Below, one piece after another: positions 3,590 through 50,096 of a stretch of 64,000 nucleotides of DNA; position 1 is the stretch's first letter; every line of letters begins with the position of its first letter. Made by a program: the position numbers and the translations under genes. The notes under the pieces are model-generated. The model saw only the letters and a program-made list of their open reading frames with translations. It was not told the DNA's origin and searched no databases. Source of the stretch: Cyanophora paradoxa CCMP329 (taxonomy: Eukaryota > Plantae > Glaucophyta); NCBI GenBank assembly GCA_004431415.1, contig QPMI01000203.1, forward strand, positions 1-64,000, given 5' to 3'.

Positions 3590-6500
3590 ATGCTGGCCTT
3601 TCTGACGCCGCCACCGGCGGCGCCTCCAACCAGGCTCGATGCACAGGCGGCGCCGATTGCGTCATTGCGAGCGCGCCAAGCCGACGAGCACGCACAGCGC
3701 GGACCCGTGACCCACGGCGACCGCTTCTTCCCGCTGCACAGGTGCGCGGAATCGTTCGGATCGTTTGAAGTAGTTGCAAGCGCCTCAGCGGGACGCGCAG
3801 CTCGCGAGGTGGCCGAGTTTCAACTGCGCTCCGCAGTAGATTCTTGTCAGCGGCCCTCCCCAACGCGGTCCGGCCCCAACCAGGATCTCTCTCAAGCACT
3901 TTGTAGCTCGAGTTTACGTGTTGCACAACACAGCGTCGCTGGCCGGACACGTTCAAGCGCAACGATCTCGATCGGGGCAGGAGCGTCGAGTGCATACGTG
4001 CGCGCGGTAGCAGCTAGCGCGTCCAGCGCAGGCATTCTGACGTTTGATCCCGCCAGTACCCTCGAGCGATCGCTTTGAGGCGTGGAATCCGGCGGAGTCG
4101 TCCAGACCGCTGCCTTTGCGGCCGACGATTGATCGCGGAGAGCCGGATGCGCTGCAGCGCTCGGAGAAGCGATCGGCGGCTCGGCAAAACGGTGCGCGAA
4201 GTGAACCGCGCATCAGCGGCGCCGTTATGCGCGCCGGTCACGCGCTGCCGGCAGGCATCGACGTGCGCAGGCGCGCGGCGGCGGGCGAGGAGAGCAACGA
4301 GGCGGCGGCCCCGAAGCGGCGCGGCAGACCAAAGAAGACGGCCGTCGAGGGTGAGGAAGCGCTCCCGCAGCCCGAGGCAGGCCCCGCGACCCCAGAGGCG
4401 CCGCGCCGCCGCGGCCGCCCCTCGAAGGCCGCCGCACCCCCCGCTGCTCCGGCCACTGCAGCCAGCTCCGCTGCGGCGGCGTGGGGCGAGGCGCCGGCGG
4501 GCGCAGAGGAGGGGGCGGCGAAGCGCAGGGGCCGGCCCCGCAAGCTCTCGTCGCCCGAGGTCCGCGACGCCCGCCGGCCCTCGCGCGGGGCCTCACCCGC
4601 GCTGCAGCCGGTGCCGCCGGAGCGCCCGCGGGAGGCGGCGAGGGCGGGGGTGTTCCCGCCGGGGCGGGGGAGGGCGGGGGAGCGGGGCCCCGGGGCCTCC
4701 CCGCGGGAGCTCTTCAACGAGTTCTTCACGCCCGCCGGCCGCCCCCCCGCCGCTCCGCCGGCCCCCGACTTCGTCACCCTGCCCGAGCACGACGACGACC
4801 ACATCCCCGCCCCGCCCCGCGCCCCGCCCCGCCCCTCCGCCCCTCCCCGGGCCCCTCCACGCGGCCCGCCCCCGCGCAGCCCCGCCGCCGCCACCCCCTC
4901 CGCGTTTCCCCGCTACGGCTCTCCGTCGGCGCCGCGCCCCTCGCCGCAGCCGTACGCCGCGCCCCAGCCGCACGCCCACGCGGCGGGCCAGGGCGGGCGG
5001 GGGTACCCCGGGGGTCGGGAGGTGGCGCGGGTGGCGCCGACGCAGGTGCAGTCGGGGCGGGCGCCGGCGCTGCACATCAGCGGCCCGCGCATCGAGGAGA
5101 GCACGCTGACGCTGGAGGGCGTGCGGGCGGCGTGCTCGCGGCCGGTCTTCGGGCGCGGCTCGCGGACCTTCTTCAAGCGGCTCGTCGCCGAGTACTCGGA
5201 GGAGCCCGCCGCGAGCACCGTCCGCGGCCGCGTCGTCGGCTCCGACCCCGCCTCGCCGCCCTACGAGGTGCGGGTGCGGCTCCCGGCGGAGCGGGGCGGG
5301 CGGCCGGAGTGCGAGTGCAGCTGCCCGTACGTGGAGGACGTGTGCAAGCACTCGGTGGCCCTCATGCTGCAGCACCTCGCGCTGCGGGACCGGCGGCTGC
5401 GGGACAAGCTGCAGGGGATCCGGGCGGAGGAGCAGGAGGCGCAGCGACTGGAGCGGGCGCAGGGGGGGCAGAGGGCGGGTGTGCGGGCGCTGGAGCCTCC
5501 GCGCCCCGGGGACTTCGACTTCGAGGCGGTGGGGGCGCTGCCGCGGCTGCACGTCGGCCTCCAGATCATCCCCCACCCGCTCGCCCTCCTCTTCGGCCTC
5601 GTCCCCAAGGAGGCCTTCGGCAAGGCCCGCCCCCGGCCCCCGCCCCGCCCCGCCCCGCCCTGCCCCGTCCGGGCCGGGCCGGGCTGGCATCCCAGCTCAT
5701 CCGCGCCGGCCTGCAGGCGTCCATCCTGAAGATCCCGGAGGCAGCCGCCGCTGCCATTCCCCCCGGCACCCCCGCTCGCGCGTGCGTGCCGCCGCGCAGC
5801 CGGGCGCGGCTGGGGCTGAGGGGCGGGCAGGCTGGTGGAGTACCTGCGGGGGCAGCCGTCGGCGATCGCGGGGAGCGCGGGGGGCCACCGGGTGCCGGCC
5901 GGCTTCGAGGGGGCGGCGCTGGACTTCGCCCGCCGCTGCTTCACCCTCCTCGAGCCCGCCTCGGGCGAGCCCTTCCGCTTCGCCCCCGACGCCGCGCCCC
6001 GCGCCCTCCTCCGCCTCCACGTCCGCCCGCCCCGCCCCGCCCCGCCGCGACGCGCGGCGCCCGACGCGGGGCGGGGGCGCAGGCGGAGGAGCAGGAGGAC
6101 GGGTCGGCGCTGCTCGTCTTCACCCCGTGGCTCCCCCGCCGCGAGCTCCACCCGGAGCTGCCCCCGGGCCCGGGCGGCGAGGAGCTCGAGGCGGTGCGGG
6201 GCGGGGCGGTCGTGCGGGGCGAGCCGGCGTGGGCCCTCGTCCCCGCCACGCGCACCTTCTACCGCTGCGACACGGACTGGCTGGCCGGGGCGCTGGGGCC
6301 GGCGGCGGGGCGCCTGCTCGCGCGCCTCGACGGCGGGGGGCGCTACCTCGTCAAGGCCGCCTCCATGCCGGCCTTCCTCACCCGCACCTGGCCCGCCCTC
6401 GCCGCCGCCACCCCGGCCCCAGAGTTCCTCCCCTTCCGCCCGGGGGCCCCGCCGCCGGCGACGCTGAACGCGGAGCCGAAGGGGGTGGTGCAGTTCGAGG

Positions 6501-9500
6501 AGTGGGAGCAGACGGGGGCGTACGCGGGGTCGCCCCCCTCGCTCGTCGCCCGCCTCGCCTTCCTCTACGGGGACACCCTCATCCCCTCCCAGCCCGCCCC
6601 CGACGAGCTCGCCCAGGCCGCCCGCTCCGCCCAGGCCGCCGCCTCCGCCGCCCACGCCGCTGGCAAGCGCTACGCCGGCCAGGCCGCCGCCCACGCCGCC
6701 GCCGCCGCCCCGGGCTCCCCCGGCGCCCATGCCGCCTCCGCCCCGCTCGGCTCGCCTGGCCCCGCCGCCGGCGCCGGGGCGGGGAAGGAGGGCGAGGAGG
6801 GGACGGAGTGGCAGCGGTTCACGCGGGAGGCGAGCGGGGGCAGCGTGTGGATCCGGCGGTACGCGTCGCGGGAGCTGGAGCTGCGGCGGCTGCTGCGCAA
6901 CCTGCGGCCGTACCGGATCTCGGGGGACCGCTTCTTCTTCGCGGAGGGGGAGGCGCTGCAGGCGATGCAGTTCCTGTACGGGATGCGGGAGCGCTTCGCG
7001 GAGGCGTGGCAGCTCGAGGGGAACGAGGCCCTCGCGCACTACCGCTTCGCCGAGGAGCCGCTGCGCGTCGAGGCCCACGTGCAGCTCGTCGAGGCCAACT
7101 TCGCCGTCCGCTTCCGCGCCGTCTCCTCCGCCGAGCCGGCCGGCGTGCCCCTCCGCACCCTCGGCGACCTCGCCGTCCGCGAGAACAGGCCCTTCTTCCG
7201 CAAGCGCGCCCCGCCGGGCCCTCCTCGCCCCCCCGCCCCCCTCACCGGCCCGCAGCGCCCAGACGGGCCTCTGGTCGCCCTTCTCCCCGCGCGCCGTCAC
7301 CGCCGTCTACTCCCTCTTCGGCACGGAGGTCAGCGAGGGTGCGCCGCCCCGCCGCCCCTCCCGGGCTGCGGCTCGGGCCGAGGCGGGGCAGTCGGGGACG
7401 AGACGGTGGCACCGGCGGCGCGGCGGGCGTACCAGCTGCCGGGGATTGTGGAGGCCCTCGAGGCGGCCGGCGTCCGCATGGCGCGCCCCGCCGCCGCGCG
7501 CGGGGGCCCGCGGGGCGGGTGACGCCGCGCAGGTGTACGACGAGGCGTCGCGGGAGTTCCTCGACCTGCTGCACGCCCGCCGCTCCCAGATCGAGGCCGA
7601 GGACGAGGCGCCCCCGGGGGGCCACCCACGCCTCCTCGCCCCGCTGCCCCCGATGCCCGAGGGCCTCACCTGCACCCTCCGCGAGTACCAGGCCCGCCCT
7701 CCCCCGCCCCCCGCGCCCCGCCCGCACCCCCGCGCGGGGCGGCGACGTGCGGAGCAGGCGCAAGGGGTCGGCTGGATCCGCTTCCTCGGGCGCTACGGCC
7801 TTGGCGGCGTCCTCGCCGACGACATGGGCCCGTCCCCGCCCGCCCCCCGCCCCACCCGCCGCGCCCGGGGCGAGGCGGGGGGCGGGCAGGGCTGGGGAAG
7901 ACGGTGCAGACGCTGGCGACACTGCTGGCGCACTACAGCGACTTCCCCGACTCGCCCCCCTCGCTCGTCGTCGTGCCGACCTCCGTCGTCTACAACTGGC
8001 AGCACGAGGCGGCGCGCTTCACGCCCTCGCTGCGCGTGGCAATCCTCGCGGGGCAGGAGCGGCACGCGGTGCTCGGCCACTTCCTCGAGGGGGCCGGGGC
8101 GCCGGTGGCGGCGGCGCCGGGGCCGGAGGCGGGGGCGGGGGCGGGGGACGTGGACGCCGTGCTGGCGGGCGAGGGCGGCCCCGAGGCCCCCGCGGAGGAG
8201 GACGACGCCGCCGACGCCTCCCTCGCCGACGGCCCGCCCGCCCCGTCCCGCCCCGCCCCGCACGCCCCGCCCCCTCACCGCCCCGCAGCCGCCTACGAGG
8301 AGGAGGAGGAGGGGGCCGGCCCGCAGCGCCGCCGGGGCCGCCGCGCGAAGCAGACGATCCTGCAGGGGCTCCTGGAGAGCGACTGGGCACGTCGCGGGCT
8401 GCGGCCGCAGGTGGGAGGGGGCGGGGGAGGGCGGGCGCGGGGCCGGCTCAGGGCCGGCGCAGGTCTACTTCACGACGTACGGCGTCGTCCGGCGCGACCT
8501 GCCCCGCCTCCGCCGCCACCTCTGGTCCCCCGCCCGCCCCCCCGCCCCCTGCCGGCCGGCGGGAGCGGGGCGCTGAGGGCGGGGGCAGGTCGTACGTGAT
8601 CCTGGACGAGGCGCAGGCGATCAAGAACCCGGACTCGGCGACGTCGACGGCGGTGAAGGGCCTGCGCTTCCTCCACGCCCTCGCCCTCTCGGGGACGCCC
8701 ATCGAGAACCGCCTCCTCGAGCTCTACTCCCTCTTCGACTTCCTCATGCCCGGCTTCCTCGGCTCCTCCCGCCGCGCCTTCCAGGACCAGTACGAGAAGC
8801 CCATCGTCCTCTACAACGACCCCCAGGCCCGCCCACCCCCGCCCCCGCCCTCCCCGCCACGGCCTGACGGGGCGGGGGCGGGCAGGTGCGGGGCCAGCTG
8901 CGGAAGCGGGTGCGGCCGTTCGTTCTGCGGCGGGTGAAGGAGGAGGTGGCAAAGGACCTGCCGCCCAAGACCGACATCGTCCTCCGCGTCGACCTCACCC
9001 CGCGCCAGCGCTACCTCTACGAGCAGGCCCGCCCCGCCCGCCCCGCCCCACGCCCCACCCGGCGAACGCGGGGCGTGCGGGCGCAGATGAGGGAGAAGAC
9101 GTGGGAGCAGCTGCGGGCGGTGATCCGGGCGAAGGGTTCCGTGCAGGCGGCGCAGGCGACGGTGCTGACCGCGCTCATGAAGCTGCGCCAGCTCTGCGAC
9201 GACCCCCGCCTCGTCGATCCCCACGGCCGCGTCCTTCCCAAGGCCCGCCCCCGCCCCCGCCCCCGCCCCCGCCCCTTACCCCCGCCGCCAGGCCATGCGC
9301 GCCGCCGCGCCGCCACTGCGCCCGGGCGGGGGCCGGGGCCGGGGCGGCGGGTGGCGGAGGAGGAGCCGGAGTGGGCGGCGGAGCTGCAGGCGGGGGCGGG
9401 CGAGGGGGTGCCCTACGCGGAGCGCGACAGCGGCAAGCTGCAGGCCCTCCTCGAGGCGCGTCGCCCAGTGCCAGCCGGGCGGCGCGGCGCGCGGCCGCCG

Positions 9501-10057
9501 CGGCTGAGCGGGGCGGCACGGGGGCGCAGCTGCTGGAGAGCGTGGTGGAGGAGGGCCACCGCGTGCTCATCTTCTCCCAGTTCGTGGGCATGCTGAAGCT
9601 GCTCGAGGCGGCGCTGAAGGAGCGGGGGTACGCGTACGAGTACATCGACGGGTCGGTGGCGGCGGGGGAGCGGCAGGAGCGCGTGCGGCGCTTCAACGGG
9701 GACGCGAGCATCCCCGTCTTCCTCATCTCCCTCAAGGCCGGCGGCACGGGCCTCAACCTCACCGGCGCCGACTACGTCGTCCACTACGACCCCTGGTGGA
9801 ACCCTGCCGTCGAGGCCCAGGCGACCGACCGGGCGCACCGCATCGGGCAGACGCGCCGCGTCTTCAACTACAAGCTCATCTCGCGCGGCACCATCGAGGA
9901 GAAGGTGCTCGAGCTGCAGCAGTCCAAGCGCTTCCTCGCCGACGACATCCTCGGGGGCGCCCTCTCGCGCGCCGGCTCGGGCGCCGCCGCCGCCCTCGAC
10001 GAGGCGACCGTCGTCAAGACCCTCACCGAGGACGACCTCGAGCGCCTCCTCTCCTGA
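3590..10057 (+). CDS. SWIM zinc finger + SNF2-family ATPase/helicase (bacterial SWIM-Snf2/SSO1653-like) with three N-terminal AT-hooks; multi-exon
   Basis: [24 protein letters not shown]; [21 protein letters not shown]; LREYQ|[14 protein letters not shown]|GLGKTVQTL; [12 protein letters not shown]; [14 protein letters not shown]; RVLIFSQF; [43 protein letters not shown]; stop at 10057. First exon 3590-3989 joins in phase through a GT-AG intron at 3990-4056. Confidence 0.88.
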
Positions 10058-10394: not shown

Positions 10395-11502
10395 GGAGCT
10401 CGCCGCCCCGTCTAGGCTATCAGTAGTCCTCCATCGCGGAGGGGGCATCGTCGCGTCTCCTCTTCGGGCCCCTGCAGAGACCGAGCCCCATGAGCGTAGG
10501 CCAGCAGAGAGAACGCGGGGCGCTGCGCACCCGTCCCACGACTCGGCTTTCCTCCGGTTGGGGGCGCTCGCCGCCGGCCGGTAGAAGAATGACGCCCCGG
10601 TCACCTGGCAGACGTACTCGCCGTTCGGCAGCAGTGTCTGAGCGGCCGTCAGCACGCGCGATAAGAGCGCGGGGCGAGCGCGAGCATTCACCTTGCAACC
10701 GCTGGCCACGTCGCACACGTGCACGGCTCCAGTAGCCACCTCGCGCCACACTGAGCGAGAGACCAGTCAGCCCTCGCTGCCAGGATCTGCGCGCTTGCAT
10801 CCGCGGACCGTTCCCGAAGACTTTTAAGTAGCCCGAGGGGGCATCGGCGAGAGACGAGCTGCTGCTCCCGCTGCACGAGCGGGAAAGCACGCTGCAAGTG
10901 CCAGCAACCGTCGGGTGGGCATTGCGCGCTTGCATCGCTGATCGGTCAGTGGAGCGAAAGCTAGCTAGGGCTTCGTGCGCCCGGGAACCGCCGCTCTTCG
11001 ATCTCCCCGATGTTGCGCTCGGCTGAGGCGAGACGAAGACTTTTCCGACCGAGGATCTCTGGTGCGCGACAGATGTCTTGTCACGTCGGGCGGGAACCGC
11101 GCCTGGGCCGCTTGCTTTGAGGCAAACGATCCTGGGGCCGTCGCTGAGTGCGAGAGGCTTTTCTGAGGGCTGGGGGCGTCGAGGGGAGCGAGCTGGGTCG
11201 AACTGCCGGGGTACCGAGTGCTGACAACCCGGGGTAGCACGGCAGCGCTAGCGCCGCAGCTCTGCAGGGGCAAGCGATCGTTCCTGTGCTCTGATTCGAG
11301 CGCCTTCAGGGGTCGCATCGTCCGCGTGACCGTGCTCGACGAGTTCTGGCATCATGGCATGGCGGACGAGGAAGCCCGCCTAGCTGCATGGAGGAAGCAG
11401 CTAGCTAGAACAGGAGGAGGACGATGACATGTTCGCGGACCGTCGGACCCCTCGCCTGGCTACGCCGCGGCCGCGGTGTATACGTACGCATCGATATCAG
11501 CG
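10395..11502 (+). pseudogene. Diverged ~1.1-kb direct duplicate of 56038-57108 (small Cys/His gene plus truncated 5' end of CCDC13)
   Basis: Colinear high similarity to 56038-57108 including introns. The CCDC13 portion is frameshifted (MADEEARLAAWRKQLAR..) and dissolves into palindrome-rich sequence after 11502. Confidence 0.92.
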
Positions 11503-11810
11503 AGGATCCGGAGCCTAGGCCTCGCGATCGGAGCCTCGGATTCGGAGGGGCGCACCGTATACGTAGTACTGCCGCGCCGGCATTCTCGGGCGAGTGTGGC
11601 GCGGCACTGCGGCAGGCCTGATCATGAGCCGCTGAGCATGATCATGAGCTCGAGGCCTAGCCGGCGCCTATAGTATATACGTAGCTATAGGAGAGAGAGA
11701 GACTCAGAAATTGAAATTACTACGACTCGGCGATTCAGTAATAGTTGCTCAATGCGCATGCAGAACTAACTTAGTAATTCATGATCACACAAGTTCGAAT
11801 TCATAGGGTT

Positions 11811-12093
11811 GTCAGAAGGACCAGGTTTCCGGTACAGATGAACATGCTCGTGCGTGCTGCGCAGCGTAGGCAAGCTGGCAGCGCAGGCGGGCAGAGCTGG
11901 TGTGTCGTGACTCGTGAACAGGTGCAGGGTACAAGTGTGTCACCCGGGGCGTGAGCCCGGGAGGGGTACATGAAAAGTAGTGGGGGTCCAATCGGCGCAC
12001 TCAATGCGAGCGCTGCGGAGACTAAGGCCAAGCACTGCGAGTAGCGCGACTCGGGGTGCCGGCTCCTGACGGCATAAAGCCGTGAGGCAATAG
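11811..12093 (-). repeat. 3' LTR (283 bp)
   Basis: Identical by eye to 25520-25802; minus-strand end ...TTCTGACA (CA completed at 11810). Confidence 0.9.
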
Positions 12094-12767: not shown

Positions 12768-14420
12768 CTAGGCGAAGTCGTGCTTCGGCCAGCCTACAAC
12801 ATGGAGCTGTACGCTCTCTTCCTGCTCAGACTCCACGGAGTCGTCGTCGCTGTCCTCCTCGGCCGGGCGGCCCTCCGAGTGAGGCTCGTCGTCACGCAGG
12901 ATCGGCGGATCCTCCATCTGCTGGTCACCATCCGCGTCCAAATGTACCGGAGGCGGAGGAGCAGGTTCAGGGGCACGCCGTCGAGGCCGACCAGGCTTCG
13001 GATCCTCGGCGAAATTATCGGGGCGGTCGTAGTAAGGGATGATGTTGTCGACATGCACCACAACGTCCATTGAACGATGCATCCGAGACGACGGGTCGCC
13101 GCATACAGTGTAGAGGTAGCCGTGAGAGAAGACCTCCACAACCACGTACGGGCCGGTCCAGCCGTTGCGGGTACCGTGCTTCATGACGTTGGTTGCCTTC
13201 GCACTCTCGCTCCAGCAAAGCACCTTGTCGCCCGGCACGAAAATCTGACGAGGTTCGTTGCCGGTGCCGTAGCGAAGAAGCTTCTGGTTGTACATCTTCC
13301 GATGGGCCTTGACCGCCTCGGCAACGCTTGACGCCGCCCACGCGACAGCCAGCGCGTACTCCGCGTACGCGTAAGGCTCGCCAAAGGGTTCACGCTGAAC
13401 CAGATCCAAACGGAGGTCCCCGGGCAGCACCAGCTCGCGTCCATGGTGAAGCGTAGCCGGAGAGAAGCCGGTCGCCGCGTGGATCGTAGTGCGCAGCGCG
13501 AAGAGCACACGGTAGTGGTAGCTATAGTACGGCCAGTAGACGTTGTCGTGCTTGTCTTCGGCACAGAGCGCGAATTCGAAGATGAGCCGCTTGTACACTC
13601 CGACGAGTCGTTCGGCACCGCCGTTGGTCGACTGATGAGAGACACCAGTGTAGATGAGCCGCATGCCCTGCGCGCAGCTTGGTCCAGAACTTGCCCCAAG
13701 GAGTGTTTGGCTTGAAAACCGTGCCGTTGTCAGTGAGGTAACGTTTGGGCGTGCCGTTCGAGGACTGAATGCTCTGTGCAGCCCATTCCATTTCCGTGCC
13801 GTCAGCCTCCGTGAGCATGACGATCTCTGGATACTTGGTGTACGCGTCGATGTCGATCAGCACTTGCGTGAAGCGGTGAGGGGCATCTTTGGCGTGAGGC
13901 ATCGGGCAGAGATCAGCTTGACGCAGGTCGCCAGGGTGCCGTGATTCGATGATCATGTGCGCATGCTGCACTCGAGGCCGGTGCTTGGCCTTCGCCAACT
14001 GGCAGTGATGACAGGTACGAACGTAGCGGTGCACCATGTTCGTCATACCAGGCCACCAGAAGCGAGTCACGATGCGCCGTGCAACGATGCATATGGACGC
14101 GCCTCGATGAGCCCAGTCATCGTGATACGCCTCCATCACTGCAGCTCTCCAGCGTTGAGGCACTACCACCGGCGAGCCCATCTTTGGGAAGAGGGGTGCG
14201 CGGAGGACCGCGCCGGAGCGGGAGAGGCAGTAGCGTCCCGCCTCGTTCACAAAGCGTTCCCGCGCCTGCCCGCAGCCGAAGCAGGTCTTGTAGACGTCGG
14301 GGTCACGGTTCAGGGCGTCAGCGCCGTGAGTGTGGGCGTAGCAACGTGCGAGATTCTCCTTCCGAAGCTTGAACGCGGTGATCATCTGACAGAGCGGGTC
14401 CGTCTTCTGATCTTCAACCA
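12768..14420 (-). pseudogene. Retroelement integrase (frameshift near 13670)
   Basis: HHCC finger YHDDWAHRG..YVRTCHHCQ; catalytic QADL, TDNGTVF, HQSTNGGAER; ATGFSPATL; WTGPYVV (GPY/F motif); no chromodomain seen. Confidence 0.9.
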
Positions 14421-15899
14421 TAGAGGCTCCGTCGACCGTCAGAGGCTGTAGAACAGGTGGTACAGGGACTTCAACCAGTGGCTGAGGCCCCTGCATCCAG
14501 CAGTCGGCGACAGTGGTTTCTGGCGGCAAGTAGGCCGGCTTCGGGGCGTTACGCCCGCCAGTTCGGTCATCCAACGGAGCGACGCCGTCCGTCGAAAACG
14601 GCTCTGCAGGTGGAAGTTCGCGTTCGTTGCCCAGCGTCTCAGGTGGAGTCGGTATCGGGAGGAGAGCCTCGTCGAGTACGTCCATCACGTTGGGAGGCGC
14701 AATGGCGTACCGACCCTTGCGAGACCCCGCACCACGCGTGAGGATAAGGTTCGGGGGACGTGGTGCTTGTGCCTCAAGTTCTTGGCGACGAGTGTCGCGG
14801 CGCTGCTTACGCTGTTCCTTCGAGAGGCGAGGACGCGCCTCGGCTCCGTCAGGATCTGCGTTGTTGCGCACGTTCTCCTCGTGTCGCTGTTGCGCTTGTT
14901 GTTTGAGCCACCGATGTTGGGCCTGCTTCGCAGCTCGATGGCGATCCTCCGCCCTGCGTCGAGGCTGCTTGTTGCCCTGCTGCCCCGCGAAGGCAGGTGA
15001 CGCCGAGGGCGCGGGAGAAGTCGCTTGAGCAGGTTCTCCATCCGTCGCGTCCGTCAGGTCTCCGACTGAGCTGTTCGGCGAAAGCGGTGGATCAGCCTCT
15101 CCGTCGCGCTCCTGCAGAGCGGGTTCGTGCTGGCGTCCGTCGAGGTGGCGTTGCGCCTCCTGCTGCCAGTAGCTCTCGATCTCATGCTGAATGCCGCCGG
15201 GGATCCGGAGCTGGGGAGGCGGAAGAAGGTTCCCGATCGGATCCGCGTCAGGCAGCACCGGCTTGCGAGGCTCGGTGGCTGAGGGGCGGTTTCGGGAAGG
15301 GTGCAAGCGAGGTCGGCCGCGAGGTCGTCCACGAGGTTGTCCACGAGGTCGCCCGCGCAGTGTACCCCTCCCCCTCCCATGGTTTCCCGAGTCGCGAGTC
15401 CCGTCGCGCGTGGTGTTGTCATGCGCGGGCGAGCTCCGCTGTTCCTCAGAGTGATGTCCCGCCCGTCCAGGGAGATCGGCCTCGGCGCGCGAGGGCGAGC
15501 TCCGCTGTTCCTCAGACGAAAGTTCCTCGTCGTCAGCGTCGGAGAACTCCGCGGGATCCACCTCCGAAGTCACGTCCTCGGCATCGTCCATCGCCTGCTC
15601 CTCTGGATTGCGGCGAGCGCGCTGTGGCGGTGAGTTGGGCGAGCTACGTGGCTCGGCCAATGTCACTGGTCGGCGTCGCTTTGTTCCAGGTGCAGGAGGT
15701 GCCCATGCCCGCCCGTCGAGGCCGGCGGCCGCGATGGATGTCGTAGGCTCGGTCGTCACGGGGACGAGCGTGCCGTAGATCTCCGTCGGGTCGTCGGGAT
15801 CGCCGCTGCGGGGTACCGAGTGTCCGTGAGCCCCATTGGGCAAGTCGGTAGTGAGGTCCGATCCGTCCGCCGCCCCAGGCTCGTAGATCGGATGCGTAC

Positions 15900-17335
15900 G
15901 AGCCATGCGCGACTCGAAGTCGGCGACAACGTTGGTCGAGCCCGGCCTGTACTCGATCGTGTAGTTGAAGCCTTGCATGACGAGCGCCGCGCGTGAGAGC
16001 GCCTTGTTCGCCAGGAGTTCTTGCGACTTCAGCCACTGCAGAGGCGAGTGGTCCGTGCGGATGGTAAACGGGTGCCCGCAGTCGAAGTAGTGTCGCCACG
16101 TGTTGACGCGTACGGCCCACATGACCGCGATGCATTCGCCTTCCGTCGGGGAGCTGTACCTCGCCTCCGTGGCCGTCAGGGTACGGCTAATGAAGGCAAT
16201 TGGTCGTTCCCGGCTGTCAGAGTCGGCCTGCATGAGCGCCGCGCCCATTGCTCGCAGGCTCCAATCCGTGTAGATGATGAACGGCTTGGAAAAGTCGGGG
16301 AGCATGAGCACGATGTCGTCGCACATGACCTTCTTGAGGTCCGCGAGTGCGTCGCTGGCTTCTGGCGTCCACTGAAGTTGCGTCGTGTCCGCTAGCTTCG
16401 CTGCGTGAATCAGGTCACGGAGCGGGAGCTCGCGTCGCGTGTAGTTGCGGATGAAGCGCCTGTAGAAACCAGTCATGCCGAGGAAGCTGCGCATGTGCTC
16501 GACGGTCTGCAGTTCGCGTTCGGTAATCTTGGAGATCACCTCCACCTTCTTCGTGTCCATGCGAACGCCTTGCGCGCTGACACGGTGACCGAGAAGGTCG
16601 ATCTCGCGGACCATGAAGTGACACTTGCTCGGTTTCAGCTTGAGGTTGCCCCGAGCAAGCGCCGCGAAGAAGGCCTTGAGATCGATGAGGTGGTGGAGAG
16701 GAGGTCCCCGAGCACTGAACTGACCGCCCGGCAGAATGCTGACGGAGCAGACTTGAGCCGAAGGGGGTGCACACCCATTTCCAGGCTCCCCATGGCAGGA
16801 GGAAAGTGGTGTAGTCACGAGAGGCTTCTTCGAGGCCGAGTTGCCAAAATCCGCTCAGGCAGTCGCCAACACTAGTACTGAAGATGGAGGAGCCTTGCAG
16901 ACGTTCGAGTTGATCGTCAATGCGGGGAAGCGGGAAGACGTCGCCTTCGATCAAGTTGTTGAGCCGTCGGTAGTCGACGCAGAAGCGCATCGTGCCGTCC
17001 TTCTTGGGCGCCAGCACCACGTGCACGGGACTGCCGTATCCAGCCTGCGAGGGCTCGATGAGGCCGTCCTTCAGCAGCTGTTCGATAGTCGCCTTGGCCG
17101 CCTTCTCCGCCGGGGGAGAGAGCCGCCGAGGGACTGTATAGAGGGGCAGCCGCTTGGGGTTGACACCTGGCAGTAGACGAATCGAGTTCGTGTACTTGAG
17201 AAGGTTGCAAGGATCAAGAACTTTGGCAAAGCATCTCGCTTGTTCGTGCACATGTACAAGGCTTTGGAAAGTGTCCGTCGTGAGGTTCAGCGCCCGAAGC
17301 ATGTAGTCGGAAGAGAGAGGTGTCGTCTGTGGCAC
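15900..17335 (-). pseudogene. Retroelement reverse transcriptase + RNase H (disrupted)
   Basis: LLKDGLIEPSQAGYGSP..KKDGTMRFCVDYRRLN..FPLPRIDD..SGFWQL..TTFLLPWG; LKLKPSKC..LLGHRVS..SFLGMTGFYRRFI..PDFSKPFIIYTDWS..IRTDHSPLQWL..YRPGSTNVVAD. 1-nt deletion after TPFG, and the YxDD segment is missing. Confidence 0.92.
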
Positions 17336-20300
17336 TGACGACGCTGGCCAGCAGCGTGCCCTGAGCGAGTGCCCTGGCCCGGAGATAGACGGAGACGCGA
17401 GGTATCAGCGCAGCTGTGTGCCGTAGCTTCGAGTCGACGTAATCGATGAGAACCTGCCCTTCGTCTGCCTCCAGCACGGGAGGGAGCCTGTGCAGTTCTC
17501 GAAGAGACTGGTGGAACAGTCGAACGTGTACAGCGTGTGTGTCACCCTGCGCCGTGACTGCACGCAGTGTGGAGTGGGTGCAGCGGTGAAGTCGTGGTCC
17601 CCTCGCCCTTGCGGGCGTCCAGCGCCGTCTTGTAGGCCCGGGCTGTGTCGATCACCGTGGAAAGGATCGCAGTAGCCACCGAGTCCGTCGTGTAGCTTGC
17701 GATGCCCGCGTCGATTGCGCTGAGGCCCTGAGGCCGAGGAACTTGAGGAAGGGGACCGACGCAGTCAGGTCGCGCAACGTAACGAGCTCCGCCGGAGTGC
17801 TGTCGTAGGCCAGACAGGCGACGAGGTAGACTGCTGAGCGGAAGCGAGGAATGTGGTGCAGCAACTGGGCAGCCTGCGCCTCGCGAGTGACCTTGTACGT
17901 GAGCGGAATCGGGCGCTTCTCGTCCTTGAAGCGGGCCATGTCGTCGTCGTTCAGCGGGCACCTGCCGATCCGACGTGCAAGGTTGTTCTGAAACACGCCC
18001 GTATTTGCGATGCCCACCGCGTCGTAGGAAGCGGGGCACCACGCGACGGGGCGCTCGTCCGAGTACAGGTCGGCGTTGTCCAGTGCCGTCGTCATGAGCA
18101 TGTACGATTGTTCGCCTGGCCAGTAGATCGCGCAGCCTGGGGCAAGGGAGAATGTGTGGGCGGGGATCTCGCGAGCGTCGGGAGGCGGGTGAAGTCTGCC
18201 GTGCTTGTTGGGTGCAATGTGAAGCCGTGCACAGACCTCCCTGCTGAACAGCGTGTCCGTGTCCTCAGCCTCCTCCGGGGCCGTCGGCGTCGTGGTCGAG
18301 GGTCCCGCGGTCGGCGTCGTGACTGTCGGCGCTGTCGGCATCGCGGCCGAGGGTGCGACAGCGGACGTTGTCACCGACGAGGCTGGAGTCATAGCACGTG
18401 CCGTTGGCTGCGCGGCCGAGGGCGTGGGGGGAAACGTCGCGGGCTTCGGAGTTGCGACTGCAACCTGTACCGTCGGCGGCGCGGCCGAGGGTGCGGTGGG
18501 CAGCTTGTCCGAAGGCATCGTCTCGCGCGGGCGCGCGGACGGTGGGCGCCACGAGCCGCCTGCAGCCGGGATGGCATCGTCCAAGCCGTCGCTTGCAGGG
18601 CGGGTTAACGAGACAGCAGCCGAGCCCGTCGGCGTTCCAGCTGGCTCGTCGTGGTCACTTGGCGACTCCTCGTCGCGGTCCTGGGCGCGCCGGCGGTACT
18701 CCGCGTTCCTCCGCCGCTGGTCCGTCTCCTCGTCCGCCGTTCGGAGGGCCGTGAGCTGCATGAGCGTCATGATGCGCTCGTTCGCATGCGGCACGATGTC
18801 GTCGAAGAACGGGAGAGGGTCATCGTTGGCGAACTGAATGATCGCCCGCTCCACCTCCAGCTCCGACAGTTTGAAGGCCGTGCACACTCGTTCGCGGTGC
18901 GCCGGCGCCAACAGCAGAAGCACGCGAAGGAGGACGTGGGGAGGGTAGTCCTCCATGTAGCCCGTGCCCAGTGCGGGGAGGGACTGAGGATTCCAGATCC
19001 ACTGGAGATTGTCGAGGTTCGGGGGCTGTACCGGATCCGTTCGAGTGAACGTTCCCGTGGCGTCGCACTGCCCCACCTGAGTCCACGGTACGGCTGAGAT
19101 GTCCGTTCCGTACGCCGGCTGAATGTGAGAGTAGGCCACGGGCGTCCCAGCATCCAGCCTGGCAGAGCGAAGGAGACCGTACTCGTCGCCCGGCCTGACG
19201 GACTTGGTCCAGCTCGTCGGGCGCGGCGGGTCCGTGACCGAGAACGTGGACGTGTCGGCGAGGGGGATGTTGGTGTACTCGTCGGCAAGAGAAGGGAAGA
19301 CCGCCTCGCGTAGATCGGCGAGCTGGGGAGCGTAGACGGCGAGGTTGCAGTAGATGCGATGAAGCAGGTCGCACATGGCCGGAGGAACCTGGCGGCAGTA
19401 GGGCGGTTCGGGGCCGGACAAGGAACGGGGCTGCGAAGCTCGTGCGGAGCAAAGCGAAGGTAGAAGGCCCGCGTTCCCGGAGAGAAGCACAAGTCCAGCG
19501 GCGTCATCTTGTTGAAGATCTCGTCGCCGCCGTGCGCGTTGTAGAGGACATGTACAGACCCCGCCGCACGAAAGCGGGCGCGAAGCGTCGCCGCCGCCAA
19601 CTGGAAGAGCTGCTCCAGCTCCCGAGCGTTTGACTGCGTGAGGCAAGCGCGGATGGTGTTGCGGAACGTCGCCACCGTCGAGTCGGAGAGTGCGGGCTGG
19701 GGCGCCGGCGTCGAGGGTATCGTGGCCAGCATTGCTGCGATCGGCGGGTTCGCAGTCGTCGGAGTCAACGTCGTACCAAGCACCTCCAGGGGCGGCCAGG
19801 GCTCCGTGAGGTGCGGCGGCCCCGAGGGACGCTGGTTCGGCGTCGCCGTCGTTGGCACCGCGGCGCTCAGCGGGTCCGATCGCGTCCGAGCCGCGGCGGC
19901 GGGGAGGGTAGGGGGGACGTAGATGGGGATGGGGCTGAGGCCGAACTCGCGCGAGAGAGCAGCGGGATCCAACGCCGGCAGGTGCGCGAAGGAGGGCGTG
20001 CCCGTAAGGTGCATTGCGACCCCCAGAGCAAGCTTCGGGCGGGGCGGCTTCTCAGTCTTCAAGTACGCGATGATGTCGTGCACCACCGAGGACCAGCTGT
20101 CGGAGCTGCAGGGTGTACAGGTCTGCGTACGTCTGGGCAAACGCGCTCTGCGTGCACGCCGGAAACGCCATCTCGTCGGACGGGGCGTCGGTCAAGGTCC
20201 GAGTCGCGGGTGGGGCTGACGATGTCGACGGCTAGCGCTGCGTGGCCGTGGACGAAGACAGCTGCGCATGCACGTGTGACGACGGCTGCGCGGCCGTGGT

Positions 20301-22890: not shown

Positions 22891-23339
22891 GTTTCAAATT
22901 CCGTGCCCCGATCTGAGACCGCGTTTGCACGGAACAAGTTGTCATACTGCCCGCCGCAGCATCCATGGCAGTGCTGAGGCGACGGCGTGGATGGCTGTGA
23001 GGGGCAGGACTTGGTGTGCTCGAGCTCGACGTCGTCCTCCTCGTCGTTGTGGTCATGGGAGCGCTGTTCACGCGTGCGCGCGGCACGGGCGGCCAGCTGC
23101 TCGTTGGAGACGGGGGCCGAGGGGTCGAACTGCTTGCGCGTGCTCGAGGCACGGGCGGTTGTTCGCTCGGCGGGGCGGGAAGAGGAGGAGGCCGGGGCGG
23201 GGGCGAGGAGGCGAGGGGCTTCCGGCGCGGCGTCGACGCGTGACGGCGGCCGGGCGGCCGGGGGATGGGTGGGCGGTGTCGGCGACGAATGTGCGTCGAC
23301 GGGGCGGCGGCGGCAAGGAGGGTCCGAGGCGCCGCGAGT

Positions 23340-24670
23340 AGATCAACGGCCGGGCTTCCGCGCGGGAAGGCCGGCTACGAACTGATGTCTCCAAAAAAAA
23401 GGGCTCACCGCGTCCGCAGCAAGGCGGAGGCGGGGGAAGGAGCCGATAGAGGAGCAGGAAGACGAGTAGTGGCCGGCGCGGCGTCGACGCGCGATGGCGG
23501 CCGGGAAGGAGGAGCGACGGGTACGGGGATGCGATGTCCGCACCGCACGGGCGTCGGCCGAGGAGCGGGAGTGGGCGGGAAAGATCGGGGTCCGAGGGAT
23601 CGCACGTAGATCACCAGCCGGGCTTCCTCGCAGGAAGGCCGGCTGCGATCTGGGGTCTCCGCCGAGGCTCACAGCGTCCGCAGCGCGGCGGAGGCGGGGA
23701 GGGAGCCGGGGAGAGGGCGGGGAAGGGCGACAGGGACGGTTCGGGGCGCCGCACGCAGATCACCGGCCGGGCTTCCTCGCGGGAAGGCCGGCTGTGATCT
23801 GCAGCTGGGATCTCCGCCGAGGCTCGCAGCGTCCGCAGCGCGGCGGAGGCAGGGAGGGAGTTGGGGAGAGTGCGGGGAAGGGCAACGGGGACGGTTCGGG
23901 GCGCCGCACGCAGATCACCGGCCAGGCTTCCTCGGGGGAAGGCCGGCTGTGATCTGGGATCTCCGCCGAGGCTCGCAGCGTCCGCGGCGCGGCGGAGGTG
24001 GAGAGGGAGCCGGGGAGAGTGCGGGGAAGGGCAACGGGGACGGTTCGGGGCGCCGCACGCAGATCACCGGCCAGGCTTCCTCGGGGGAAGGCCGGCTGTG
24101 ATCTGGGATCTCCGCCGAGGCTCGCAGCGTCCGCAGCGCGGCGGAGGCAGGGAGGGAGTTGGGGAGAGTGCGGGGAAGGGCAACGGGGACGGTTCGGGGC
24201 GCCGCACGCAGATCACCGGCCAGGCTTCCTCGGGGGAAGGCCGGCTGTGATCTGGGATCTCCGCCGAGGCTCGCAGCGTCCGCAGCGCGGCGGAGGCGGG
24301 GAGGGAGAGGGCGGAGACGGGAGGGGGCAGGTTCGAGGGGCCGCACGTGGATCACCGGCTGGGTTTCCTCGCGAGAAGGCCAGTGATGATCTGCTGTCTC
24401 CGACGAGGCTCCCGGCGTCCGCGGCGCGGCGGAGGCAGGGAAGGAGCCGGTGTGGGGGAGGGGAGACGAGTAACGGACGGCGCGGCGTCGGCGAGCGACG
24501 GCGGCCGGGGAAAGGAATGACGGGTGCGGAAATCGATGTCGGCGACGTATGGACGTCGGCCAACGGGCGGGAGTGGGCGGGGGAAGTGATGACGAGGAGG
24601 GTCCGAGGAGCCGAGGGAAGATCGCCGACCGGGCTTCCGCGCGGGAAGGCCGGCTGCGATCGGTGATCTC
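23340..24670. repeat. ~149-bp tandem repeat array with a conserved hairpin in the retroelement 5' leader
   Basis: Equivalent positions at 23656, 23811, 23960, 24109, 24258; degenerate hairpin copies near 23340, 23608, 24350, 24620. Confidence 0.9.
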
Positions 24671-25314
24671 CGGCGAGGTTCACGTGTCCGCAGCGCGGCG
24701 GAGACGTGGGCGGGAGAAAGTGGGGGCGGGGGAAGTGATCGCGAGGCAGATCCGCAGCTGAGCGTCGGCGGTCCACCGGCGAGTCGAAGGGCTGGATCCG
24801 CCAAAAATTTTGGCAGAGTCTCCCCCTTCGAAAGGCCGAGAAGTGCGCGGCGCTGAAGCGGGCGGCAGGGTGGGTCGGATCGTCGAAGGGATCGGGATGA
24901 CGGGACCCGGGAGCGTTCGGTCGATGACGGGCGCGTCCGGTCGATTTCCGATCGCCTCCGATGCCGCCAGCAACGATCGGAAGCGACGGCGGCGACGGCA
25001 CGCGTGTGCAGACGACAACGGTGATGTGAAAGGTCGAGCTCAGCGGCTGGCATGGAGGATCGGACAGCGGCTGGACAGGGCGGGGGTCAAGGTGCGATCG
25101 GATGTTGCGAGGCGATCGCGCGCAGGGGGGGGGGCGACGTGACGGGGCTTCAAACGATGTGAATTGAAGAGATGGAGCTTGCCAGCACGGAGAGGCGCCG
25201 GGGGAGATCGGTTGGGGTCGGTGACGGGAGGAGATTCGCTGGGCGGACGAACGCGGCGATCGGGCCTTTTCGCGAAAGGGCCGAGTGCGACGCGCTGTCT
25301 TCTCACCGTCCGAC

Positions 25315-25519: not shown

Positions 25520-25802
25520 GTCAGAAGGACCAGGTTTCCGGTACAGATGAACATGCTCGTGCGTGCTGCGCAGCGTAGGCAAGCTGGCAGCGCAGGCGGG
25601 CAGAGCTGGTGTGTCGTGACTCGTGAACAGGTGCAGGGTACAAGTGTGTCACCCGGGGCGTGAGCCCGGGAGGGGTACATGAAAAGTAGTGGGGGTCCAA
25701 TCGGCGCACTCAATGCGAGCGCTGCGGAGACTAAGGCCAAGCACTGCGAGTAGCGCGACTCGGGGTGCCGGCTCCTGACGGCATAAAGCCGTGAGGCAAT
25801 AG
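25520..25802 (-). repeat. 5' LTR (283 bp)
   Basis: Identical to 11811-12093; lacks the terminal A of the CA end and is not followed by a TGG-type PBS. Confidence 0.9.
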
Positions 25803-26174
25803 TTGATTTTGAATAAGCTTGAAGCCTGCAATAAAAATGTGACTCGGTGAAAAGTTGAAAAACGCGGAGATCTAGACTCTGCAATAAGATCTACACGCAG
25901 ATGAGTCCGACCGGGACGGTCATGATCACGTCGTCCACCTTGGTCCAACTTGGCAAGCCTTGAAGCCGGACAATTTGGCAACTTGGCAATCCAACACTGC
26001 GACACTGTGACAATCCGCGCTCGAGGTCCGACGGTCTAAGCCCAGAGAAATACGGAGTACGTGTAATAGCTTCTACTGCCAGCGGCTGATCGAATATCGT
26101 GGCAGGAACTTGAAAGCAAAACAATTAAGTACGTATCCGGGCTCGAGAAGTCTTGCGAATGTCTCGCCAGCGCA

Positions 26175-28709: not shown

Positions 28710-29330
28710 AGATGCACTGCGGCACTGTGGCACAGATCTAGAGTCTAGCGGTGCCCGACATTGCACGTCCGTATTTGGACACGTCACGGCGTACTACGGT
28801 ACTAAAACGCAGGTCCGGGCTACTAGGCTACAAGTGTGGGAATGTACACTGCGGCCGCCCGGCGGCCGCGGCCGCGGGCCCAACCCACCAGCGAGCTGGC
28901 CGGCCCGGCGGCCGGGCCCTGCGTGGCCCCCTATATAGCTAAGCTTAAGGAGAGTAATGCGCCTCCCCGCGGACACTCTGGCTAGCTAAATAGCTACATG
29001 TGTCCGCATGCACAGCGTGGTGCTGCATAGCGTCTTGTGGCGGCGGGGGTCGCCTCGGGGCGGTGGCGGGAGCCCCTACAGGGCCTTGGGGGGGCCCGAC
29101 ATGGAGTCAGCCTGCGGTGGGCGCGAAGATTAAGCTAAGACGTCCTAGGGGTTTGTGGTGTTGGCCATGGGCCATGTTCTAGATGATCGTAATCGTAATT
29201 CTTAGCTCCCCTGGGCTTTCCTCCATGTCTAGCTGATCGCAATCGTAATTCTGAGTATCTTAGCTTGGTCTAGATGAGATCGTAATCGTAATTCTAGATC
29301 TAGATGAGATCGTAATCGTATAGCTCCCTG
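28710..29330 (+). repeat. Dispersed repeat family B, copy 1, with adjoining ATCGTAATC-type degenerate minisatellite
   Basis: 28780-29128 is the reverse complement of 35310-35607; also homologous to 50190-50430. Confidence 0.88.
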
Positions 29331-32553: not shown

Positions 32554-32963
32554 TGCGTTCAGCGTAGACAGATCTAGCTAGCTGTGAACTACGCCTGTCT
32601 GGGTTACACGTAGGAAGGTGCGGCCCTCGCCGTTGCCGGCCCGGCCGTTCCCTCCCGAGACCCGTAAGGGGAGTAACGCTCCACCCCCGCACAGCCTAGG
32701 CCGCGCGCGTGTCGTGCGCAGCATCGCGTCGTCGTTCTTGGGCGGTGGGAGTTCCTGCAGGCCCGGCGGGGCCGGGACCCGTCGGTAGCCTGCGGGGCCG
32801 ATGCGGCGCACGCGCGGAGGGGGGTCGGTCACTGAGTCAGATCGAAATTGATCGGAAATCGAAATCGAAGGCGCGCACTCGGGGAAAGCGCGAAAGCGCG
32901 ATCCCTCCCTGGTCGATTCTGCAGGGCGGCGGAAGCGCGCAGAGGGGGGTCAGACAGCGCACG
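32554..32963 (+). repeat. Dispersed repeat family A, copy 1
   Basis: Highly similar to 49668-50096 (direct) and to 33522-33707 (inverted, internally deleted). Confidence 0.92.
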
Positions 32964-33521: not shown

Positions 33522-33707
33522 CCGAGTGCGCGCCTTCGATTTCGATTTCCGATCAATCGGCCCTAGGCTGTGCGGGGGTGGAGCGTTACTCCCCTTACGG
33601 GTCTCGGGGGGAACGGCCGGGCCGGCAACGGCGAGGGCTGCACCTCCCTACGTGTAACCCAGACAGGCGTAGTTCACAGCTAGCTAGCTCTGTCTACGCT
33701 GAACGCA
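33522..33707 (-). repeat. Repeat family A, inverted copy with internal deletion
   Basis: 33559-33707 is the reverse complement of 32554-32703; 33522-33556 is the reverse complement of ~32848-32882. Confidence 0.9.
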
Positions 33708-49667: not shown

Positions 49668-50096
49668 TGCGTTCAGCGTAGACAGAGCTAGCTAGCTAGC
49701 TGTGAACTACGCCTGTCTGGGTTACACGTAGGAAGGTGCGGCCCTCGCCGTTGCCGGCCCGGCCGTTCCCCCCGAGACCCGTAAGGGGAGTAACGCTCCA
49801 CCCCCGCACAGCCTAAGCCGCGCGCGTGTCGTGTGCAGCATCGCATCGTCGTTCTTGGGCGGTGGGAGTTCCTGCAGGCCCGGCGGGGCCGGGACCCGTC
49901 GGTAGCCTGCGGGGCCCGGCGGCCGATGCGGCGCACGCGCGGAGGGGGGTCAGATCGAAATTGAAGCGCCCTGAAATCGAAATCGAATTTTGAAGGCACG
50001 CACTCGGGGAACTTCGGAAAGCGCGAAAGCGCGATCCCTCCCTGGTCGATTCTGCAGGGCGGCGGAAGCGCGCAGAGGGGGGTCAGGCAGCGCACG
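49668..50096 (+). repeat. Repeat family A, copy 3
   Basis: Highly similar to 32554-32963. Confidence 0.92.

What the first reader, a model, noticed from the sequence alone, without database searches (positions are those of the whole stretch)
13519..19556. The same in-frame inverted triplications interrupt conserved pol motifs of the retroelement
Seen on the + strand: cac gtg cac 17018-17026 (SPV[HV]VL), act agt act 16871-16879 (FS[TS]VGD), acg cgt acg 16106-16114 (WAV[RV]NTWRHY), atg cat atg 14087-14095 (HRGASI[CI]VA), tgc gca tgc 13958-13966, tag cta tag 13519-13527, aca tgt aca 17250-17258 and 19548-19556. Removing 6 nt restores the usual gypsy spacing in the first three (SPxxL.KKDG, FSxxD, WAxxxFRxY). 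A few such 9-mers are expected by chance in 10 kb, but their coincidence with 2-aa motif expansions is independent support. Being frame-preserving, the process could also add dipeptides to host proteins.
Basis: partly seen in the sequence, partly recalled or inferred. Interest (0 to 1): 0.8.

Follow-up and report, generated by a model that had tools for sequence, protein, structure and literature searches.

The report
Transposon-type scars add dipeptides to retroelement
A dead gypsy-type retroelement in what is probably the alga Cyanophora paradoxa carries at least seven 6-base insertions of the form XYZ to XYZ-revcomp(XYZ)-XYZ, three of them adding two amino acids inside conserved polymerase motifs. 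They are local examples of a scar found across this 64-kb window that looks like the footprint of a cut-and-paste transposon.

Summary

- **The 9-mers are real and not chance.** All eight listed 9-mers are at the stated coordinates, and three more lie in the span. That makes 11, against about 3 expected by chance.
- **Seven are derived insertions.** Contigs of other copies of this family lack exactly 6 nt at 13572, 13958, 14087, 15201 and 16106. More diverged relatives lack 6 nt at 16871 and 17018.
- **The motif expansions are private.** Twenty-one RT homologues and the solved Ty3 enzyme lack the extra dipeptides in SPV[HV]VL, FS[TS]VGD and WAV[RV]NTW.
- **One site fails and three are untested.** 18901 is shared by other copies. 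13519, 17250 and 19548 could not be checked.

Across the window the scar is quantised. The 3-nt form occurs 168 times against 28-39 expected, and 2- and 4-nt forms show no clear excess. A second fixed form, W-C-rc(W)-G-W (+8 nt), occurs 41 times against about 5.

Best mechanism (inferred, about 60%): excision footprints of a transposon with a 3-bp target duplication and 5'-C...G-3' ends. Flank hairpins are opened and annealed through the duplicated triplet. No donor element is in the window.

First-stage readers noted the same scar on other pieces of this genome. None of those notes had been followed up.

The parts
11811..12093 (-). 3' LTR of the retroelement (283 bp)
   Evidence: 100% identical to 25520-25802
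25520..25802 (-). 5' LTR of the retroelement
   Evidence: no clear target duplication seen at the outer ends
16415..17335 (-). ORF holding the N-terminal part of the reverse transcriptase
   Evidence: RVT_1 25.5 bits, below the 29.6 cut-off; Ty3 RT E=5e-23
13522..16818 (-). ORF with RT C-part, RNase H, a ~490-aa unconserved insert and the integrase zinc-binding domain
   Evidence: RT_RNaseH 8.6e-29, Integrase_H2C2 6e-13; Ty3 alignments
13519..13527 (.). 9-mer TAG CTA TAG at the stop of the pol ORF; origin untested
   Evidence: outside the stretch laid
13572..13580 (.). 9-mer GAA TTC GAA; 6-nt insertion
   Evidence: loose ends at 13577 in X17 and X2 read straight from ...GAGCG into CGAAGATG, so they lack 6 nt
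13958..13966 (.). 9-mer TGC GCA TGC; 6-nt insertion in the integrase
   Evidence: 'left out 6' at 13958 in X17, X1 and X2
14087..14095 (.). 9-mer ATG CAT ATG; 6-nt insertion (ASI[CI]VA) in the integrase zinc-binding domain
   Evidence: 'left out 6' at 14087 in X17, X1 and X2; X15 keeps it
15201..15209 (.). 9-mer GGA TCC GGA; 6-nt insertion shared by only some copies
   Evidence: 'left out 6' at 15201 in part of the depth in X17, X1 and X2
16106..16114 (.). 9-mer ACG CGT ACG; 6-nt insertion (WAV[RV]NTW) in RNase H
   Evidence: 'left out 6' at 16106; 2-aa gap in Ty3 at this place
16692..16693 (.). point where this copy lacks 55 nt present in another copy (expected YxDD region); also the frame change between the two pol ORFs
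   Evidence: joint 'skips 0, 55 letters between' in X17; RVT_1 matches profile positions 2-123 only
16871..16879 (.). 9-mer ACT AGT ACT; +2 aa in FS[TS]VGD
   Evidence: all 21 homologues and Ty3 have a 2-aa gap here; a diverged relative reads FSVCD (loose end at 16897); close copies differ by 4 nt, not 6
17018..17026 (.). 9-mer CAC GTG CAC; +2 aa in SPV[HV]VL
   Evidence: 2-aa gap in all homologues, Ty3 and P0005; two diverged relatives lack 6 nt (loose ends at 17017 and 17021); contigs over 16932-17183 and 16932-17200 are net 6 nt shorter
17250..17258 (.). 9-mer ACA TGT ACA; origin untested
   Evidence: no contig row and no alignable homologue
17723..17733 (.). 11-mer AGG C CCT G AGG; 8-nt insertion of the second scar class, which shifts the frame (also readable as an 8-nt tandem duplication)
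   Evidence: 'left out 8' at 17720 in X17, X1 and X2; class statistics
18901..18909 (.). 9-mer GCC GGC GCC; shared with other copies, probably chance or old
   Evidence: the X17 contig over 17961-19398 has no gaps; the X1 contig over 17339-18989 has only the 2- and 8-nt gaps
19548..19556 (.). 9-mer ACA TGT ACA; origin untested
   Evidence: only the identical X15 contig covers it

Best explanation
The span is the pol region, on the minus strand, of a 14-kb Ty3/gypsy-type LTR retrotransposon copy. The copy is dead: it has frame shifts and a 55-nt loss where the RT catalytic box should be. Its lineage has collected small stereotyped insertions while sitting in the genome as DNA. Each insertion turns a triplet XYZ into XYZ-revcomp(XYZ)-XYZ (+6 nt). 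A rarer form is XYZ-C-revcomp(XYZ)-G-XYZ (+8 nt). Three of the +6 events fall in conserved RT and RNase H motifs and lengthen them by two residues, which is tolerated because the copy is no longer under selection.

The insertions themselves are shown. The mechanism is inferred. I take them to be excision footprints of a cut-and-paste DNA transposon with these properties:
- It duplicates 3 bp of arbitrary sequence on insertion.
- Its ends read 5'-C...G-3', as CACTA-type elements do.
- On excision the transposase leaves both flanks as covalently closed hairpins.
- Host nucleases open the hairpins three or more bases from the tip.
- The two opened ends then carry complementary triplets, because both derive from the target duplication. 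They anneal and are filled in, giving W-rc(W)-W.
- If the first nick falls one base inside the element, each hairpin tip keeps one terminal base. The same annealing then gives W-C-rc(W)-G-W.
For: Insertions shown:
- Four 6-nt gaps sit exactly at four 9-mers in contigs of other copies from three runs, and the 8-nt gap sits at the 11-mer.
- Loose ends of related contigs lack 6 nt at 13572, 16871 and 17018.
- Private 2-aa gaps appear against 21 homologues, Ty3 and the closest relatives.

Same process outside the element:
- In the window's own duplicated segments, all nine 6-nt indels are W-r-W. Seven of eight 8-nt indels are W-n-r-n'-W.

Fixed geometry:
- |W|=3 gives 168 against 28-39 expected. 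|W|=2 gives 1.3-1.6 fold. |W|=4 gives 9 against 3-5, mostly tetranucleotide repeats or GC-only words.

Fixed bases:
- W-C-r-G-W gives 41 against 3-5. W-G-r-C-W gives 3 against 5.7. A/T gives 1 and T/A gives 0.
- Half forms and two-arm palindromes show little or no enrichment. No longer remnants occur.

Known biochemistry and rate:
- CACTA elements have a variable 3-bp target duplication and CACT(A/G) ends (PMC4423477, Table 1).
- Flank hairpins opened by host enzymes are established for hAT, Transib, MULE and RAG (PMC5499845).
- The rate, about one scar per 20-30 substitutions between copies, is compatible with an active element family. That last judgement is my own estimate.
Against: - No element with inverted ends, a 3-bp duplication and C...G termini is present in the window.
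- No filled/empty polymorphism was seen.
- Known footprints, for example in rice, are heterogeneous (8 perfect of 94, PMC4423477), whereas these are nearly uniform.
- Local densities are very high, about 23 scars in 450 bp at 11350-11800.
- Flank hairpins have not, to my knowledge, been demonstrated biochemically for CACTA transposases.
- The LTRs are identical, so almost all scars must predate the last copying of this element. The scarred, dead lineage must therefore have been mobilised in trans or copied in some other way.
Confidence: 0.6

Rival explanations
1. A host repair or replication process with no mobile element. Candidates are fold-back or template-switch synthesis at breaks or Okazaki flaps, polymerase-theta-type templated insertion, or a host or domesticated nuclease that makes 3-nt-staggered hairpin-capped breaks. 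Any of these would write the inverted copy directly.
For: No donor element is in the window. The density is extreme and there are hot spots. Iterated forms W-r-W-r-W occur 8 times against 0 expected. The DUP-INV-DUP topology exists at a larger scale in FEN1/rad27 mutants (PMC13334657).
Against: The unit is always 3 nt, with no length spread. The extra bases are always C then G, which a polymerase-driven switch does not predict. No flank or microhomology preference is seen. Small inverted triplications have ~150-bp units, ~30-bp spacers and 6-bp junctions (PMC13334657).
Confidence: 0.2
2. The polarity is reversed. The 9-mers are ancestral, and the other copies lost 6 nt by slippage between the two direct triplets.
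For: W-r-W contains a 3-nt direct repeat 6 nt apart, so the deletion would be precise. For 13572, 13958, 14087 and 15201 only copies of the same family were compared.
Against: At 16106, 16871 and 17018 every outgroup lacks the two residues: other families in the same organism, 21 homologues and Ty3. An excess of 9-mers over chance across the window needs a generating process.
Confidence: 0.05
3. The insertions are errors of reverse transcription (template jumps by the element's own RT), not of genomic DNA.
For: Identical LTRs imply that the scars passed through at least one round of copying.
Against: The same scars separate non-retroelement duplicates and fill intergenic tracts. One also separates neighbouring units of a tandem array inside the element, at 23799.
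Confidence: 0.04
4. Chance 9-mers, or an assembly or sequencing artefact.
For: About three 9-mers are expected by chance in the span. 18901 behaves as one of them.
Against: There are 11 against about 3. Exact co-location with indels is seen in three independent runs. Contigs of run X15 reproduce the window form without differences. Both forms coexist within single runs at 15201 and 16871.
Confidence: 0.02

Closest known systems
Excision footprints with palindromic (P-type) additions left by hairpin-forming cut-and-paste transposons (hAT, Transib, MULE) and by V(D)J recombination
   Same: A retained target duplication with an inverted copy of flank bases between the two copies. The palindrome has no loop, as expected from an opened hairpin (mechanism in PMC5499845).
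   Different: Here the added piece is always the full 3-nt duplication, or that plus one C and one G. The outcome is nearly uniform, the scars reach 2-4 per kb, and the donor element is not identified.
CACTA / En-Spm (CMC) transposons
   Same: A 3-bp target duplication of variable sequence, and ends CACT(A/G)...(C/T)AGTG, so the first base is C and the last is G (PMC4423477, Table 1). This fits the +8 scar.
   Different: None is found in this window. Rice footprints are heterogeneous (PMC4423477). First-reader notes of CACTA elements elsewhere in this genome are unchecked.
Small inverted triplications (SIT) linked to FEN1/rad27 defects
   Same: DUP-INV-DUP order of the three copies.
   Different: Units of ~148/160/148 bp with ~30-bp spacers and 6-bp junctions, tied to Okazaki fragment ends (PMC13334657). 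Here the units are 3 nt with no spacer or a fixed C/G.
Ty3/gypsy LTR retrotransposons (the carrier element)
   Same: LTRs, a CCHC knuckle, and RT, RNase H and integrase in that order. Best solved match is Ty3.
   Different: No protease or capsid domain recognised. It has a ~490-aa insert between RNase H and integrase. The RT lacks its catalytic segment in this copy.

Membership tests
Ty3/gypsy LTR retrotransposon | Two long terminal direct repeats | tested here: met
   283 bp, 100% identical, at 11811-12093 and 25520-25802
Ty3/gypsy LTR retrotransposon | Reverse transcriptase of the Ty3 type | tested here: inconclusive
   Ty3 RT E=5e-23 over motifs 1-4. Pfam RVT_1 scores 25.5 bits, below the 29.6 cut-off, and the catalytic part is missing or out of frame.
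Ty3/gypsy LTR retrotransposon | RNase H followed by integrase (gypsy order) | tested here: met
   RT_RNaseH at aa 175-284 and Integrase_H2C2 at aa 886-944 of the same ORF; Ty3 alignments
Ty3/gypsy LTR retrotransposon | Short target duplication flanking the LTRs | tested here: not met
   No 4-6 bp direct repeat at the outer LTR ends. Both flanks are scar-saturated, so it may have been overwritten.
Excision footprint of a 3-bp-duplicating hairpin-type transposon | Two direct copies of the target triplet remain | tested here: met
   W...W in both scar classes; other copies have a single W
Excision footprint of a 3-bp-duplicating hairpin-type transposon | Loop-less inverted copy of flank bases between them | tested here: met
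   168 against 28-39 expected; two-arm forms are not enriched
Excision footprint of a 3-bp-duplicating hairpin-type transposon | Constant bases attributable to element termini | tested here: inconclusive
   C...G is specific: 41 against about 5, and the reverse order is not enriched. An origin from an element end is inferred, not shown.
Excision footprint of a 3-bp-duplicating hairpin-type transposon | A donor element family with matching duplication and ends exists in the genome | tested here: not met
   None in these 64 kb.
Excision footprint of a 3-bp-duplicating hairpin-type transposon | Filled versus scarred alleles at one site | not testable with these tools
   Needs whole-genome comparison of strains
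Small inverted triplication (FEN1-linked) | Units of about 150 bp with a spacer and junction microhomology | tested here: not met
   Units are 3 nt with no spacer, against PMC13334657

The most novel reading that the evidence does not exclude
No mobile element is involved. Cyanophora would have an endogenous enzyme, for instance a domesticated transposase, that makes 3-nt-staggered, hairpin-capped breaks and so writes 6- and 8-nt palindromic insertions across its genome. This process would build a sizeable share of some intergenic tracts and occasionally add dipeptides to coding sequence.
Probability: 0.18. Interest if true: 0.9.

Novelty: new variant of a known kind. Interest (0 to 1): 0.66.

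Why it matters
The retroelement works as a natural control for the scar. Conserved pol motifs and many outgroups fix the ancestral state, so they show that it is an insertion, of exactly 6 nt, made after the family diverged.

That supports reading the many similar 9- and 11-mers across this window as events of the same process rather than as a composition quirk. Within these 64 kb there are about 140 and 36 more than expected.

If the footprint model holds, this genome records an unusually active cut-and-paste element with an almost deterministic repair outcome. Roughly a third of the 11350-11800 intergenic tract would be made of its scars.

The practical consequences are for annotation and for divergence dating of repeats, both of which would need to allow for these scars. 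The +6 class is also a ready source of in-frame dipeptide insertions. In the papers I searched, including the 2019 genome paper (PMC6704402), I found no description of it.

Tried and rejected
- **Fetching the DNA of other copies through protein searches.** Two word searches with the RT pieces returned no near-identical protein of the same genome. The best hit was 72% identical (alignment A1; 65% by BLASTP). As a result 17250 and 19548 stayed untested, and 13519 lay outside the stretch laid. The third search went on naming the organism.
- **Donor transposon in the window.** A scan for inverted ends plus a 3-bp duplication gave mostly GC-rich noise. A CACT...AGTG scan gave nothing credible. A scan with C...G ends, 12 or more of 14 inverted bases and moderate GC gave two chance-level pairs.
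- **Inverted repeats at 28799-29129 and 35308-35600.** They looked like transposon ends but enclose host genes (PRA1, a protein kinase).
- **Other unit sizes and variants.** Units of 2 or 4 nt, half scars, the reverse G...C order and remnants of two to four element bases show little or no enrichment.
- **Flank or target preference.** None beyond composition.
- **The 7-nt insertion at 13670.** It fits neither scar class.
- **Dipeptide insertions in host proteins.** The 9-mers in the Snf2-type gene are mostly GC-only words at chance level. The gaps against its gene model are introns.
- **Literature.** Searches on glaucophytes, footprints and inverted triplication found no prior description.
Full report
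**What is there**

The span lies inside an LTR retrotransposon on the minus strand. Its 283-bp LTRs, at 11811-12093 and 25520-25802, are 100% identical.

- One ORF (16415-17335) holds the first RT motifs.
- A second ORF (13522-16818), in another frame, holds the RT C-part, RNase H, a long unconserved insert and the integrase zinc-binding domain.
- The best solved relative is Ty3: RT E=5e-23, RNase H 7e-16 and integrase 1e-8.
- The copy is dead. RVT_1 reaches only 25.5 bits over profile positions 2-123. A contig of another copy carries 55 more letters between 16692 and 16693, where the catalytic box should be.

The organism is very probably *Cyanophora paradoxa*:

- A host gene at 3590-10054 matches EukProt protein tig00000863_g4959.t1 at 99-100% in its exons.
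- That identifier style is the one used in the 2019 genome paper, which reports about 100 Mb and 67.6% GC (PMC6704402).
- The contig sets of organism A run to roughly 70-120 Mb.

**The observation**

Three more, at 13572, 15201 and 18901, lie in the span. That gives 11, against 2.5-3.6 expected from Markov models of order 1-5. Palindromic hexamers as such are not enriched, at 115 against 113.

**Are they insertions?**

I laid contigs of four public runs of the same organism on 13565-19560. Run X15 reproduces the window without differences. Runs X17, X1 and X2 hold other copies that are 3-5% diverged.

- **6-nt gaps.** The indel table has four '6 left out' rows, at 13958, 14087, 15201 and 16106. 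Each is the first base of a 9-mer, and no 6-nt row lies anywhere else.
- **15201.** Both forms occur within the same runs, so this scar is shared by a sub-lineage.
- **13572.** The clipped ends of contigs in X17 and X2 read straight across and lack 6 nt.
- **17018.** Two different diverged relatives, clipped at 17017 and 17021, continue in register only if 6 nt are removed. Contigs over 16932-17183 and 16932-17200 are net 6 nt shorter, with exactly 6 gap letters.
- **16871.** A diverged relative reads FSVCD, which is the canonical spacing. The close copies differ from the window by 4 nt, not 6, so that site has a more complex history.
- **18901.** It is shared by the other copies, with no gap, and is probably one of the roughly three chance 9-mers.
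- **Untested.** 13519, 17250 and 19548 could not be checked.

**Motifs**

I aligned the RT with 21 homologues (A1). The only two insertions private to the window are two residues in SPV[HV]VL and two in FS[TS]VGD.

- Ty3 shows the same two gaps.
- So do the two closest relatives, P0005 and P0013, which are 72% and 58% identical in the alignment A1. By BLASTP, P0005 (65% identical) lacks the HV pair and P0013 (45%) lacks the two residues in FS[TS]VGD. Both carry Cyanophora-style identifiers.
- In RNase H, Ty3 has a 2-aa gap at WAV[RV]NTW.
- For the integrase sites the distant alignments are ambiguous, so the evidence there is the reads alone.

Polarity is therefore fixed by outgroups at three sites and inferred by analogy at the others.

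**The process is not specific to the element**

The window holds 168 non-trivial 9-mers, against 28-39 expected. The excess sits in the lower-GC intergenic blocks and in the retroelement, which has 26 against about 5 over 12-24 kb. The GC-rich host-gene blocks show no clear excess.

The window's own duplicated segments give an independent check over 4.4 kb of alignment:

- All nine 6-nt indels are W-r-W.
- Seven of eight 8-nt indels have the form W-n-rc(W)-n'-W, six of them with n=C and n'=G.

Counting that 11-mer gives these figures:

| Form | Observed | Expected |
|---|---|---|
| W-C-r-G-W | 41 | 3-5 |
| W-G-r-C-W | 3 | 5.7 |
| A/T pair | 1 | ~1 |
| T/A pair | 0 | ~1 |

One 11-mer lies in the element at 17723-17733, where the other copies lack 8 nt.

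Other forms show little or no enrichment. This covers units of 2 or 4 nt, half scars (about 1.6-1.8 fold), two-arm palindromes and longer remnants. Flanks show no preference.

**Mechanism (inferred)**

Three features point to an enzyme with fixed geometry rather than to polymerase slippage or template switching:

- a fixed 3-nt unit;
- a loop-less inverted copy;
- an optional constant C...G.

The model that reproduces both products is as follows.

1. An element with a 3-bp target duplication sits between two copies of W.
2. Excision leaves both flanks as hairpins, as shown for hAT, Transib, MULE and RAG (PMC5499845).
3. Opening each hairpin three or more bases from its tip gives the tails W-rc(W) on the left and, on the other strand, rc(W)-W on the right.
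4. The terminal triplets of those tails are complementary because both derive from the duplication. Annealing and fill-in give W-rc(W)-W.
5. If the first nick falls one base inside an element with 5'-C...G-3' ends, each hairpin tip keeps one C. The same annealing then gives W-C-rc(W)-G-W.

CACTA elements have a variable 3-bp duplication and CACT(A/G) ends (PMC4423477, Table 1).

Several things are not shown:

- No donor element is in the window.
- No filled allele was seen.
- Known footprints are heterogeneous (PMC4423477).
- Flank hairpins are not established for CACTA enzymes. That statement rests on my own knowledge.

**Consequence for the element**

The LTRs are identical, yet the copy differs from its relatives by 3-5% and by at least eight scars. 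Nearly all scars must therefore predate the last copying. The scarred, dead lineage was propagated, presumably in trans, and it inserted into a tract that is itself saturated with scars on both sides.

**Comparison and novelty**

The topology matches the FEN1-linked small inverted triplications. Those have units of about 150 bp with spacers (PMC13334657), so membership fails.

The nearest known kind is a transposon excision footprint with palindromic additions. What is new is the uniform outcome, the second C/G form and the density. My searches found no description of this in glaucophytes.

First-stage readers of this scan noted the same two scar forms, and proposed the same idea, on other pieces of this genome. 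Two further notes report CACTA elements there. None of these notes has been checked, and I do not count them as evidence.

**Verdict**

The mechanism is probably transposon excision, at about 0.6. A transposon-free host process is the main rival, at about 0.2.

Noticed in passing
window-wide; e.g. 11350, 11604, 25946, 28714, 50367; in the element 17723-17733: A second stereotyped scar, W-C-revcomp(W)-G-W (+8 nt), occurs 41 times against about 5 expected. The reverse order G...C is not enriched. It accounts for 7 of 8 eight-nt indels between the window's own duplicates.
   Followed up: yes
16692-16693: This copy lacks 55 nt that a contig of another copy has here. That is the expected position of the RT catalytic box, and it also changes the frame.
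   Followed up: partly
11350-11800 and 25803-26040: Both flanks of the retroelement are tracts saturated with 9- and 11-mer scars, about 23 in 450 bp on one side. No target duplication of the element itself is recognisable.
   Followed up: partly
28799-29129 and 35308-35600: These ~330-bp inverted repeats enclose host genes (PRA1, a protein kinase) rather than a transposon. The arms differ by 8-nt and 14-nt scars.
   Followed up: partly
16871-16879: Close copies of the family differ from the window by 4 nt here, apparently reading AAC-GT-ACT. Two different palindromic states therefore exist at one site, possibly as alternative repair products.
   Followed up: no
23168-24730: A tandem array of ~140-250-bp units sits in the element's leader. 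Neighbouring units differ by a 6-nt CTG-CAG-CTG scar at 23799.
   Followed up: partly
3590-10054: This host Snf2-type helicase gene matches EukProt tig00000863_g4959.t1 at 99-100% in its exons, which names the organism as Cyanophora paradoxa. Its 9-mers are mostly GC-only words at chance level.
   Followed up: partly
32554-32700, 33562-33707, 49668-49815: Three copies of a ~147-bp repeat start with TGCGTTCAGCG. Two of them are in inverted orientation 860 bp apart, and no target duplication is seen.
   Followed up: no
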